Made by a program: the position numbers and the translations under genes. The notes under the pieces are model-generated. The model did no database searches. It was not told the DNA's origin and was given only the letters and a program-made list of their open reading frames with translations. DNA of 61,676 nt, filler included, from Sluysia triapertura (lineage: Eukaryota): assembly GCA_046118255.1 (NCBI GenBank). It is 4 parts of 4 records of this genome, joined end to end, with 100 filler letters (N's around TTAATTAATTAA, not from the genome) between each part and the next. Parts side by side here need not be neighbours in the genome. Positions count along the whole stretch, not along the records: positions 13,979 to 30,999 come from JBJNIA010193714.1; 3 more parts are not named here. One strand, written 5' to 3'. Shown one piece after another: positions 26,857 to 31,099 of the stretch; positions within the stretch are counted from its first letter, which is position 1; each line of letters begins with the position of its first letter.

Positions 26857-27489
26857 AATTATATCCGTCTATAATTATACTTCAAATACGATATTAGATT
26901 ACAGTTTATTGCATCTAATGCATTAAATCATATTAGTACACTTAAATGCTGTCTCTATTGCGTATTGCAAATGTATTTATAAAATTGATTTGGTTTTTAT
27001 TTTATTATGTTGCAATTATATATAGTACATTTACACTGCATAAAAAAGCAATAAGTTTGGTTTCATTGATCATTGAATTAATCAAACATTTTAAACCGTT
27101 AAATTTATATCAAGTTACAAAAATTTAAGAATATAAAGTGTAATTTTAAATACGCAATAAATAATTGAAAAATGAAACACTTACACAATAAGTGGTTGTC
27201 ATAAACCATGTTTTATGAAATGCTTTTTTAAACAAATGATATCATATAAAAATAATTATGTTTATTATTTGTTCTTGTCGTATTTTAATCTATTTTAAAA
27301 TCGATATATACTTTGTTTTTTTCAAATATGAAATAAGAAGTGTTAAGAAAACGTATATGGTTGATTTTCTATTTGCTGCTTTTTCTCAAAATTAAGCTTT
27401 ATATGTGCACAAAATACAAAAGGAGTGGTTCGCCTATAATTGATGTCTAATAACTTGCTGTGATTTTTTCTTAACCTAATAGGATACAG

Positions 27490-27860
27490 CAAACTTAAGG
27501 TAAGTCCACCAACGTACTAGGCTTACTGGTTAGGGCTAGCCGTTGGATTTAAAGTAAAAATATAAAATCTATGGAGGTTAATTAAATTTATGCTACTTTT
27601 CTGAATGTAAAAAAGAAATGAATTTATAATAGTCAGTATTTTAATCAGGTTCTTAAATTGAACCTTTTTTCAGATTTAATTATTTTAATGAGGTTCCAAA
27701 ATGAACCTTAAATTTTATCTTCAATGAATTTAATTAGGTTTTGAAACCGAACCTTGAAAAAATTTAAATCACAATTTGGTATTAGATATTTAATGTGCTT
27801 CTAAATTGAATCTTAAGATTTTACTGAGATGTTAATGAGGTTCTAAATGGAACCTATTTA
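27490..27860 (+). repeat. Family B structured repeat with five AGGTTC-N6-7-GAACCT palindromes
   Basis: Hairpin core at 27500-27546. Palindrome units start at 27641, 27685, 27730, 27790 and 27832. Confidence 0.75.
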
Positions 27861-29229
27861 AAAATTTATTTAAGTGATAATAACTGAAATTAGAAAATAA
27901 TTTTTTACTAAATAATACAATCTATAAATATGTACAAGTTTAATAAAAACGAAAATAAAACTTTAAAATTGGATTAATTTATAATTAGTCCTATCCTTGT
28001 ATTGTAAATAAAGTAGTTTAATCAGCTACTTCTAAATAGTACGTAATTCTAGTAAAAATTTAAGTAAAAATTTACAAATGCAATGATAAAAATTGCAAAA
28101 ATCTTCTAAGTAATTGTCTCCAAAGATATATTTGCTCAAATAACTGGTGAAGTACAAACGAATTAATGTTGTGTCAAAATTGTGTGAAATGGTTGATAAT
28201 TTTGGTATTTTTATATTAAAAAGATGACCTTGAGGTCAAGCGATTAAACCAATTATTTAAAATAAATAATTTAAAAATTTTAACAATAAAATTAATAATT
28301 TAACAATAATAATCAATAAAAATAATATTAGTACTCCCTTACTTTATAGAATTATTCCAATTAAGTAATTATATATTTCCAATTAAATGTAAATATGTAA
28401 ATTTTCCAATTAATTAAATTAAATATAAGTTTACAAAAATCTCGATAGTTATGAATATAAATTTACAAAATCAATAATTACGTATATTTATGCACAAATT
28501 CAGTATTAAACGTAAACACATTAAACATCTTATAAACATAACAAACTTAATTGTAGGTATAGGATGTTAATGCTAATTGAATGCTTCTGAGGCTATTTAA
28601 GAAATACAAGTTTTAGTTGTCCCTACTTAAAATTTTGTGCAGTGCGCGATCCTTACTAAATTTAAATCAATCAACTGTCGTGCACTCTAGATTTACGGTA
28701 CTTATGGGCGAAATTCATATATTTTTAAAATGGTAAATTATACATACAATTATAATTTTGTGCAACAACTTTATTAATTGCTTTAAAACAATAATGGCAA
28801 TTTACTCAATCTTAAAGTTATCTTAGATCTAATATTAATTATTCTGCGAGGATTTTAACTATCTTATGATACAGAAAATATGAATCTGGAGACGAATCCA
28901 CCTAATAGATGCGGCTTATATCTGACCAAAGGTGATCTACTAGGATTTTCAATATGCTTAAAAAACTAAACTAAGCAAGCAAGAAAGTAATCTTACTTTT
29001 AATCAATTATCGACTTAACAATTAATGTATAATTTCACATCTTAATTAGTTATATTATTCAGTTATATTTTAATTCAGATTATCGTTAAACTAGCCAGAT
29101 TATGGCTAGACAGTCTAAGCAATTAAGCTAGCCTGGTATGGTCTATCGTATCTAGTGAAATATTTTATGTAGTTTAAACGTTGAACTAGCCTTAGTAAGG
29201 TCTAGTAAATCTTTCTAACGATTTTAAAT

Positions 29230-30680
29230 ACTAAATAACTTTAGAACTTCAATAAAACCTTTAAACATAAAATAAGATTAAGTCTAAAAATAGAATTAAT
29301 TAACTTAATTAAGGAAAAGTACGTTTTTGTGAATAACTTTTGAATGCGGAATGCTATGTTAACTCATTACAGACCGTTGACGTAGTAATATGTCATAGTA
29401 ATGCGTCCGAAATCCAGTAGCTACTGACGTAGTAGTACGTTTTTTGGCAGAATAACTTTGTTTATGTTGCCATCAAACAGTCGATAAAGAATTTTTAGAG
29501 ACCAGTTATGAGTTAAATTTGAAAATGGCGTATTTGTTTTAAAAAGACCTTTCGATGAAAGTTCATGCAAGAAGGCCTTAATATTAAGCAAAGTCAAATT
29601 TTAATTAATTTTTAATTATGTAATGTTGAATTTTTTATACTTAGAATGATGCAAATGTAATGAATGGAATATGAGATGATTTCTATGAAAGACGAGAATC
29701 TAGAACTGAGTGTGAAAAATTTCTAGAGTGGTTTGTTTGAGAATAAGAAGCTTAAAACATTTTTCATTAGAAAATTGGGTGTGAAAACCAGAAATCAATT
29801 AAATTCTGAAAACTAAAATTAAATTACTTAATTTTTATATAAGTTAACAATAATAATGATTGTTATATTAATGTGAGAATTAATTTAAATAAAAGTAGAT
29901 TGAGTAGAGTAAAGGAAAATAATAGATATTCGTAAATCAAATTTTTGTGTCTTGTATCTAAAAACGTTTGACAGTATGTACCATGTAACTGTCGAAGTTA
30001 TTATTGTCTGATTAATTCTCAAAGAATGTTTCAGTGATTTGTGCGAGAGAATGTTTAATCAAAAATTTGGGAATGATTGGATGATGAGAAAATATAAAAA
30101 GGAATACCAAAAAAATTTACTTCACATATTTTTACGGCAGTAACAACAATTAATAATGCAAATGAGAAAATCCATGATTTAATTAATTTTTGAATTTATT
30201 TTATAATTAAAAATATTATTTTGGAGGCTTTTATTAAAATAGTTTTAGTTTTTGTGTTGCTTTGGAAATTTATATTTAATTATTATTAATGAATAATAGT
30301 TTAAATAATAGTTAATATTTTTCTTAGTGTTGCATCACCTCTGGTTTCTTTGGATAGATTATTGTGTCTTTAATATTGTTATAAACACTATTGTTAATTT
30401 TGAGACTTATTCATTTTTATTTAAATTACTCGTATTATTGTTAAATCAGAGACTTATAACAGTAATTTATATTTTATTTTTTAATTATTAAATTTTTGAG
30501 TTATTCTTCTTAAATGGAATTAAAAACTTAATTGTCGGGATGAATAAATATCATTATTAAAATAAGAAAATTTGTGACAATTTATACTTGATCTATTGAA
30601 TATTGAAATTATTCAGAATCTATTTAAGTTAAGTAAACTGATATTGACTTATTGTTACTAATAATTTCTAAGATGCAACA
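29230..30680 (+). mobile_element. Family A LTR-like repeat, middle and 3' part, containing a 150-bp insertion
   Basis: Aligns with ~10480-10830, ~32630-33050 and the reverse complement of 12684-13878. Ends ...AAGATGCAACA at 30680. Confidence 0.75.
29363..29512. mobile_element. 150-bp TTAA-site (piggyBac-like) MITE inserted in family A
   Basis: TTAA on both sides (29359-29362, 29513-29516). Imperfect TIR CTCATTAC / GTTATGAG. Absent from the paralogous copy near 10620, which shows the empty site. Confidence 0.75.
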
Positions 30681-31099
30681 TGATGTTGGACTGCGAATGA
30701 TGACAATGTTGTTATTGTTGAATAAATAACTTGACCAACTAATAGCTGCAAGAAAGAATTTCAAAAATTTTCAATGTGGCGAATGTAATATTAGGATGCA
30801 GACCTAAAGTATCATTTAACCATTTAACTGCCGGTGAGCGCATTTTTGCGAGCATAAATTTATTTGAGAGATTATATGAAATATATTTGAGAAAAGCCAT
30901 TAAAAATCTGGCTTGCGTTAGGGTTAATTTCAAAATTAATAAAAAATGTATAAATTTTCATGAATTTTCAATAAAATAGCATAAAATATGAAAATTGGTN
31001 NNNNNNNNNNNNNNNNNNNNNNNNNNNNNNNNNNNNNNNNNNNTTAATTAATTAANNNNNNNNNNNNNNNNNNNNNNNNNNNNNNNNNNNNNNNNNNNN

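What the first reader, a model, noticed from the sequence alone, without database searches (positions are those of the whole stretch)
27500..27546. Family B: dispersed element with two overlapping, mutually exclusive, covarying hairpins (candidate RNA switch)
Seen in four diverged copies: ~25183 (+), 27500 (+), 34367 (+) and 50435 (-). Hairpin 1 (9-bp stem, 9-nt loop) is GTAAGTCCA/TAGGCTTAC, GTGAGTTCA/TGGGCTCAC and GTGAGTCCA/TGGATTTAC. It shows a compensatory A-T to G-C change and five G-U pairs against one A-C mismatch, which favours this strand as RNA; it is weak in the 25183 copy. Hairpin 2 uses the loop and 3' strand of hairpin 1. Its outer pairs are CCAACG/CGTTGG versus CTACGA/TCGTAG, and its inner pairs are CTAG/CTAG, CTGG/CCAG and TTGG/CCAA, i.e. 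repeated compensatory changes. Hairpin 1 would bury a consensus 5' splice-site-like (AG|)GTRAGT and hairpin 2 would free it. Inference: a conserved bistable RNA element in a mobile-element leader/LTR or a small-RNA gene family, possibly controlling splicing or priming. I could not match it to hammerhead or HDV-like ribozyme cores, and saw no consistent Sm site as expected for an SL RNA.
Basis: partly seen in the sequence, partly recalled or inferred. Interest (0 to 1): 0.75.

Follow-up and report, generated by a model that had tools for sequence, protein, structure and literature searches.

The report
Very abundant 50-base hairpin repeat
The supposed RNA switch is one copy of a roughly 50-base, hairpin-forming repeat scattered in what look like thousands of copies through a very AT-rich eukaryotic genome, so it is most likely part of a small mobile element and not a regulatory switch.

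Summary
**The sequence is real.** Both copies inside my piece exist: A at 25182-25261 and B at 27500-27580, both on the + strand. Each has a G+C-rich hairpin, an A-rich linker of 17-21 nt and the box TGGAGGTTA.

**The family is far larger than four copies.**
- Contigs of one public run pile up on 27503-27550 to a summed depth of about 190,000, against a single-copy depth of 14-26.
- At least 127 distinct contigs cover that place.
- The limits are sharp and the flanks are unrelated and AT-rich.
- The core is therefore a dispersed repeat, probably in thousands of copies. Copy A belongs to a diverged subfamily.

**Hairpin 2 is conserved.** All 14 pairs form in both copies. It is really one long imperfect palindrome.

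**Hairpin 1 is not supported.**
- It scores -4.1 kcal/mol against -16.7 for hairpin 2.
- Its probability in the folding ensemble is about 0.
- Only 4 of its 9 pairs form in copy A.
- It does no better than a control with the partners slid by one column.

**Other points.**
- The repeated compensatory changes in the outer stem shrink to one pair once the arms are aligned with a 1-nt shift.
- Sequence upstream of GTRAGT is not conserved, so this is not a spliced-leader RNA.
- No Rfam family matches.

**Best reading:** a module of a non-autonomous mobile element, either SINE-like or MITE/foldback; which class is unresolved. The bistable switch is not supported.

The parts
27500..27550 (+). Copy B of the core repeat, close to the family consensus (3 differences: 27502, 27527, 27528)
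   Evidence: summed depth 193,674 in at least 127 contigs at 27527. Loose ends lie before 27495/27503/27517 and behind 27550/27551. Sequence.
27509..27546 (+). Hairpin 2: a 6-bp outer stem, a 2/1-nt internal loop, a 4-bp CTAG/CTAG stem, a G.G mismatch, a 4-bp stem with one G.U, and a 5-nt loop
   Evidence: -16.7 kcal/mol; inner pair probability 0.97-0.99; all cells paired in both copies.
27500..27526 (+). Claimed hairpin 1 (GTAAGTCCA with TAGGCTTAC). It can form on paper but is not populated.
27551..27571 (+). A-rich linker (14 A of 21)
   Evidence: The flank consensus of 214 contigs is also A-rich.
27572..27580 (+). Box TGGAGGTTA, shared with copy A and with a third copy seen as a joint contig
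   Evidence: table 5/5c: joint 25233 to 27564. Depth here is about 400-600.
25182..25235 (+). Copy A of the core, from a diverged subfamily. GTGAGT has decayed to TTGACT. Hairpin 2 is intact with a different outer stem.
   Evidence: depth about 1,700 in 67 contigs; majority letters differ at 25186, 25190, 25207 and 25212.
25236..25252 (+). A-rich linker of copy A (11 A of 17)
25253..25261 (+). Box TGGAGGTTA of copy A
27630..27866 (+). Five hairpin units (consensus ATTTTAATGAGGTTC-N6-8-GAACCT) downstream of copy B. They may belong to the same longer composite repeat; this is uncertain.
   Evidence: the bin 27623-27700 has mean depth 7,162.

Best explanation
The finding is one copy of a very abundant interspersed repeat. 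Its conserved core is about 50 nt, runs from GT(G)AGTCCACC to CCGTTGGATT(T), has about 50% G+C in a genome of about 25% G+C, and folds into a single long imperfect hairpin.

It is most likely the conserved module of a non-autonomous mobile element. In a subset of copies an A-rich linker, the box TGGAGGTTA and further hairpin units follow the core. The palindrome is the part kept by whatever machinery copies the element, either as paired terminal repeats in DNA or as a hairpin in an RNA or single-stranded intermediate.

Shown here: very high copy number, sharp limits, subfamilies, conservation of hairpin 2, and lack of support for hairpin 1. Inferred: mobility. The class, SINE-like retroposon or MITE/foldback DNA element, is not settled. 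It is not a two-state RNA switch.
For: - **Copy number and limits.** 2,143 contigs were laid. Bin 27449-27535 has mean depth 67,060 and position 27527 has 193,674 in at least 127 contigs. Near-identical single-copy contigs have depth 14-26. Loose ends are sharp at 27495-27503 and 27550-27551, and the flank consensus agrees only about 0.5.
- **Subfamily.** Copy A has its own majority letters and 67 contigs.
- **Third copy.** A joint contig shows core, 22-nt linker and box together.
- **Not chance.** The two local copies are significant and are the only ones in the piece.
- **Hairpin 2 kept.** 100% of 28 cells pair; slid controls give 54% or less.
- **Strand asymmetry.** The + strand folds 2.5-4.6 kcal/mol better than the - strand.
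- **A-rich 3' flank.** Seen in A, B and the third copy. The consensus of 214 contigs has 24 A in 30 letters.
- **Transposon-rich setting.** A decayed piggyBac transposase lies in the same piece.
- **No known RNA family.**
Against: - No target-site duplication, empty site or autonomous partner was shown, so mobility is inferred from copy number and structure only.
- The depth comes from one run of contigs that may be the assembly's own sample. The tool warns that summed depth is not a copy number.
- No tRNA-, 5S- or 7SL-like head was found, and the match to a pol III B box is poor.
- The ends are not the CCC...GGG usual for piggyBac.
- TTAA flanks copy B but not copy A.
- I could read only two copies base by base.
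Confidence: 0.78

Rival explanations
1. SINE-like retroposon. The + strand is transcribed, the hairpin RNA with its A-rich tail is copied back into DNA by a LINE enzyme, and the core is the head shared by several subfamilies.
For: - The 3' flank is A-rich on the + strand in copies A and B, in the third copy and in the 214-contig consensus (24 A of 30).
- A conserved G.U pair makes the + strand the better folder.
- The 5' limit is sharp.
Against: - No tRNA, 5S or 7SL match.
- The B-box resemblance of GGTTAGATT or GGTTAATTA is weak.
- A palindrome is unusual for a SINE head.
- No direct-repeat duplications are clear.
- The left flank consensus is also A-rich, so the A-richness may only reflect the kind of site it inserts into.
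Confidence: 0.33
2. MITE or foldback DNA transposon, possibly moved by a piggyBac-type transposase. The two arms of the palindrome are the inverted repeats that the transposase binds.
For: - The whole core is one imperfect palindrome, including GAGTCCA with TGGATTT.
- TTAA sits on both sides of copy B (27495-27498 and 27549-27552). Only 0.7% of 50-nt windows in the piece show that by chance.
- The flank consensus strings begin or end with TTAA(A).
- A decayed piggyBac gene lies in the piece.
- The subfamilies keep their arms matched.
Against: - Copy A has no TTAA on either side.
- A consensus of A/T-only flanks contains TTAA often by chance.
- The ends are asymmetric, with three extra bases on the left, and lack CCC...GGG.
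- A-richness of both flanks on one strand is not expected for a symmetric element.
Confidence: 0.3
3. One reading: a bistable RNA element in which hairpin 1 hides a 5' splice-site-like GURAGU and hairpin 2 frees it, controlling splicing or priming.
For: - Both hairpins can be drawn in copy B, and GTGAGT is the majority at the 5' edge of the core: 37,608 of 38,186 depth at 27502.
I could not check them.
Against: - Hairpin 1 is 7 to 12 kcal/mol worse than hairpin 2 and has probability about 0.
- Only 4 of 9 pairs form in copy A, there is no covariation, and a control slid by +1 pairs 56% against 67%.
- No gene surrounds either copy.
- A copy number in the thousands does not fit a regulatory switch.
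Confidence: 0.03
4. A spliced-leader RNA or other small-RNA gene family.
For: AAG|GTAAGT in copy B, with a stable hairpin downstream, recalls the layout of spliced-leader RNAs.
Against: - The would-be leader exon is not conserved. Depth falls to 1,269 at 27487, and the left flank consensus agrees only 0.53.
- There is no Sm-site-like match common to A and B.
- No SL1, SL2, SmY or snRNA match appears even at E of 10 or less on 161 nt.
- Copy A lacks the GT.
Confidence: 0.02

Closest known systems
MITEs and foldback elements (non-autonomous DNA transposons), including piggyBac-type MITEs with TTAA duplications
   Same: Short, very high copy number, palindromic, dispersed in AT-rich non-coding DNA, with subfamilies whose arms stay matched. 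TTAA flanks copy B.
   Different: The core is only about 50 nt. The best-conserved inverted arms are internal rather than terminal. There are no CCC...GGG ends. The flanks are strand-asymmetric and A-rich. TTAA is missing at copy A.
Very short SINE-like retroposons (for example Maque of Anopheles, about 60 bp; recalled from memory, not checked here)
   Same: Tens of bases long, dispersed, a defined strand and an A-rich 3' side.
   Different: No pol III head or 3' tandem repeat is recognisable. This one has a strongly palindromic core and a far higher apparent copy number.
Introners, transposons that create introns (PMC9860276: 5 to more than 2,000 copies, median length 30-654 nt; some families carry the 5' splice site and take the 3' site from the duplication)
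   Same: A short, high-copy element whose 5' edge is a consensus GTGAGT. Copy B is bounded as TTAAG|GT...TTAAAG|T, so a GT-AG unit of 55 nt can be drawn.
   Different: Neither local copy lies in a recognisable gene. The AG is not part of the conserved core. No RNA evidence was available.
G+C-rich palindromic clusters of yeast mitochondrial DNA and bacterial REP elements (from general knowledge)
   Same: Short G+C-rich imperfect palindromes strewn through AT-rich DNA. REPs also have a conserved GTAG-like head 5' of the hairpin.
   Different: Those belong to organelles or bacteria. This piece is nuclear-like eukaryotic DNA (piggyBac remnant, no long ORFs). No RAYT-like gene is known here.

Membership tests
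Bistable RNA switch | Two mutually exclusive folds of comparable stability | tested here: not met
   Hairpin 1 is -4.1 kcal/mol (best fold containing it -9.3) against -16.7 for hairpin 2. Pair probability is about 0.
Bistable RNA switch | Both helices conserved, with covariation across copies | tested here: not met
   Hairpin 2 pairs in 100% of cells. Hairpin 1 pairs in 67%, forms 4 of 9 pairs in copy A, has no double changes and matches the slid control. Only two copies were readable.
Spliced-leader RNA | Conserved leader exon directly upstream of the GU | tested here: not met
   Similarity among copies begins at GTGAGT. Depth is 1,269 at 27487 against 193,674 in the core.
Spliced-leader RNA | Sm-binding site, or a match to a known spliced-leader model | tested here: not met
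   No Rfam match at E of 10 or less. No motif of the AAUUUUGG kind is common to A and B.
Self-cleaving ribozymes (hammerhead, HDV-like, twister and others) | Match to the catalytic core model | tested here: not met
   Rfam 15 at E of 5 or less on the whole piece, and at E of 10 or less on 161-nt windows, gave none.
MITE (piggyBac type) | TTAA target-site duplication | tested here: inconclusive
   Copy B is flanked by TTAA on both sides (chance 0.7% per window). Copy A is not. The consensus flanks are suggestive but consist of A and T only.
MITE (piggyBac type) | Terminal inverted repeats starting CCC...GGG | tested here: not met
   The ends read (A/G)GTGAG... and ...GGATT(T). No TTAACCC occurs in the piece.
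MITE or foldback, generic | Short, high copy, inverted-repeat structure | tested here: met
SINE | Head derived from tRNA, 5S or 7SL with pol III A and B boxes | tested here: not met
   ARAGORN found none. There was no tRNA, 5S or 7SL hit in Rfam. The box resemblance seen by eye is weak.
SINE | A-rich or simple-repeat 3' tail, with flanking duplications | tested here: inconclusive
   The 3' flank is A-rich in three copies and in the consensus. No clear duplications were seen.
Introner | Copies make up spliced introns of unrelated genes | not testable with these tools
Helitron 3' end | Hairpin followed about 10 nt later by a CTRR terminus inserted at A|T | tested here: not met
   The core ends GGATT(T), with no CTRR.

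The most novel reading that the evidence does not exclude
The core is a strand-specific, hairpin-guided element that carries its own consensus 5' splice site (GTGAGT) at its 5' edge. That would make it an introner-type transposon in an AT-rich eukaryote. The hairpin, through GAGUCCA pairing with UGGAUUU, would mask the splice site in most contexts. Copies landing in genes would become short GT...AG introns by taking an AG from the duplicated target, as drawn for copy B: TTAAG|GT...TTAAAG|.
Probability: 0.08. Interest if true: 0.7.

Novelty: new member of a known kind. Interest (0 to 1): 0.3.

Why it matters
As it stands this is genome-annotation knowledge. A very abundant short hairpin repeat breaks assemblies: contigs of the run end at it. 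It also needs masking, because it mimics structured-RNA signals and splice sites in scans like this one. It would matter more if the copies proved to be introns or small-RNA sources. A 50-nt unit with a perfect 5' splice site in thousands of copies could then be a live case of transposon-driven intron gain.

Tried and rejected
**Searches that found nothing useful**
- Rfam on the whole piece, and on 161-nt windows around each copy, gave only AT-rich chance hits far below the gathering scores.
- The tRNA scan found none.
- Exact pattern scans gave 0 hits in viral and prokaryotic genome contigs. In metagenomes they gave 0, then one hit. That hit (L001) is a G+C-rich telomere-like palindrome, so it is a chance match.
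- Full-text searches for 11 sub-strings of the core found only unrelated primers.

**Ideas tested and dropped**
- A larger tandem duplication joining A and B: no colinear similarity exists beyond about 90 nt.
- More copies in the piece: nhmmer and Smith-Waterman find none above the null level.
- Sequencing adapter or linker artefact: rejected, because diverged subfamilies and decayed copies sit inside unique sequence.
- CRESS-virus or Helitron origin hairpin: TAGGCTTAC matches the nonamer TAGTATTAC at only 7 of 9 places, and there is no CTRR end.
- Derivation from 5S rRNA or telomere repeats: only short motif resemblances (TAGGCTTA, TTAGGG).

**Organism.** The protein-atlas look-ups gave no usable hit for the piggyBac piece. 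The 135-aa frame gave only a weak MATH-like lead.

Full report
**Setting**

The piece 13979-30999 has about 25% G+C. It has no ORF above 135 aa in the standard or bacterial code and no tRNA. It holds (ATT)n microsatellites and a decayed piggyBac transposase with stops and frameshifts at about 14929-16640 on the - strand (Pfam DDE_Tnp_1_7; translation). It therefore reads as transposon-rich, non-coding nuclear DNA of an AT-rich eukaryote.

**The observation**

Copy B (27500-27580) and copy A (25182-25261) are both real, and both lie on the + strand.
- The motif CTAGGCTT-N5-14-GGGCTAG occurs twice, against none in 100 shuffles.
- A profile of the two copies recovers only them, at E about 1e-22.
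- Both show the same layout: hairpin, then an A-rich linker of 17-21 nt, then TGGAGGTTA.

**Copy number**

I laid the contigs of the one public run that holds this DNA on 25100-27700 at 80% likeness.
- Near-identical contigs have a single-copy depth of 14-26.
- Bin 27449-27535 has mean depth 67,060.
- In all, 2,143 contigs were laid.
- Loose ends cluster before 27495, 27503 and 27517, and behind 27550 and 27551.
- The consensus of the loose flanks consists of A and T only and agrees about 0.5.

The unit shared by most copies is therefore about 48-51 nt, from GT(G)AGTCCACC to CCGTTGGATT(T). It sits in many different contexts. The copy number is probably in the thousands, though the tool warns that summed depth is not a copy number and the run may be the assembly's own sample.

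The majority differs from copy B at three places: 27502 (G, giving GTGAGT) and 27527/27528 in the loop. Copy A belongs to a diverged subfamily with 67 contigs and depth of about 1,700, and it has its own majority letters. A joint contig running from 25233 to 27564 with 22 other letters between shows a third copy with core, linker and box.

Depth 13 nt upstream of the GT is only 1,269. Downstream of the core it is 400-1,700, so longer versions exist in tens of copies and the core alone in far more.

**Structure**

Hairpin 2 forms in both copies and dominates.
- It scores -16.7 kcal/mol in B and -15.6 in A.
- Its inner pairs have probability 0.97-0.99.
- All 28 cells of its 14 pairs are standard pairs. 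Versions with the partners slid give 54% or less.

On the ungapped MAFFT alignment, five pairs change on both sides, four of them in the outer stem. A gap-allowing alignment of the arms prefers a 1-nt shift on both sides. CCAACG/CGTTGG then faces TCTACG/CGTAGG, leaving one compensatory pair plus one-base differences in the internal loop. Either way the pairing is kept although the sequence differs.

In B and in the family consensus, GAGUCCA also pairs with UGGAUUU. The outer stem therefore has two registers. With RNA parameters they hold about 75% and 25% of the ensemble. With DNA parameters the order is reversed. The whole core is thus one long imperfect palindrome.

Hairpin 1 is not supported.
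- Alone it is -4.1 kcal/mol, and the best fold containing it is -9.3.
- Its diagnostic pair has probability about 0.
- In copy A only 4 of its 9 pairs form.
- It shows no double changes, and a control slid by +1 pairs nearly as well.

The + strand folds 2.5-4.6 kcal/mol better than the - strand in all four versions, because of a conserved G.U. This gives mild support to a + strand RNA or single-strand intermediate.

**What it is**

No Rfam family comes near, including spliced-leader RNAs, snRNAs, tRNA, 5S, 7SL and the ribozymes. The spliced-leader idea fails because the would-be exon is not conserved. The high copy number, sharp limits, subfamilies, composite longer versions and transposon-rich setting point to the conserved module of a non-autonomous mobile element.

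Two classes remain open.
- **SINE-like retroposon.** The 3' flank is A-rich on the + strand in A, B and the third copy, and the 214-contig consensus has 24 A in 30 letters. The strand asymmetry of folding also fits.
- **MITE or foldback.** The palindrome itself fits. TTAA lies on both sides of B, which 0.7% of windows show by chance. A piggyBac remnant is nearby.

Against each:
- The SINE reading lacks a pol III-type head.
- The MITE reading lacks CCC...GGG ends, copy A has no TTAA, and TTAA is expected often in A/T-only consensus strings.

I put the general reading (selfish dispersed repeat, not a switch) at about 0.78 and split it roughly evenly between the two classes.

**Comparison with known systems**

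The element works like a MITE or a short SINE, but it fails or leaves open the defining tests of each named subclass (see the membership table). Introners are the most interesting neighbour. Published families have 5 to more than 2,000 copies and median lengths of 30-654 nt. [quoted passage not shown] Here GTGAGT is the 5' edge of the core in 98% of the depth at 27502, and copy B can be drawn as TTAAG|GT...TTAAAG|. Neither local copy is in a gene, the AG is not conserved, and no RNA data were available.

**Verdict**

The interpretation as a bistable switch is not supported. The family is an apparently undescribed but ordinary kind of short interspersed hairpin repeat, and its interest is low to moderate.

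Noticed in passing
window 14929-16640 (-): Decayed piggyBac-type transposase (Pfam DDE_Tnp_1_7 on the piece 16419-16625) with in-frame stops and frameshifts. No TTAACCC-type ends were seen nearby.
   Followed up: partly
window 27630-27866 (+): Five units of consensus ATTTTAATGAGGTTC-N6-8-GAACCT, spaced 42-60 nt apart, each forming a 6-bp hairpin. The bin 27623-27700 has mean depth 7,162 in the public run, so this is a second abundant hairpin repeat, perhaps part of the same composite element as copy B.
   Followed up: partly
window 22640-22682 (-): A G+C-rich island that shares GAGTCC, CCAACG and CCGT(T)GG with the core, in the same order, but has a short loop in place of the inner CTAG hairpin. 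It folds at -19.1 kcal/mol (z = -2.4). It may be a short relative of the family. It lies 115 nt from the N gap at 22352-22525.
   Followed up: partly
window 29085-29206 (+): A stretch rich in CTAGCC/GGCTAG hairpins. The part 29176-29206 aligns weakly to the core (24 of 29 with two gaps), but the score is at the level of shuffled sequence.
   Followed up: partly
window 25453-25481 (+): A 10-bp-stem hairpin (AAACACCGA...TCGGTGTTT; -13 kcal/mol, z = -3.9) in moderately repeated DNA downstream of copy A. Joint contigs in the run skip between copy A and this place.
   Followed up: no
window 26449-26853 (+): The longest stop-free frame in the piece (135 aa) lies between the two copies. It has no Pfam hit. 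The protein atlas gave only a weak MATH-domain-like lead (score 0.88, clusters mostly from nematodes).
   Followed up: partly
window 14927-14995, 20733-20790, 23485-23545: Long (ATT)n and (AAT)n microsatellites. The stretch 23479-24978 has a strong C-over-G skew (-0.34).
   Followed up: no
L001 600-800: The only metagenome contig that matches the degenerate core pattern is a G+C-rich head-to-head telomere-like repeat (TTAGGG and CTAGGC variants facing CCCTAA). It is unrelated, but it shows that the inner core resembles telomere-repeat variants (TAGGCTTA, TTAGGG).
   Followed up: yes
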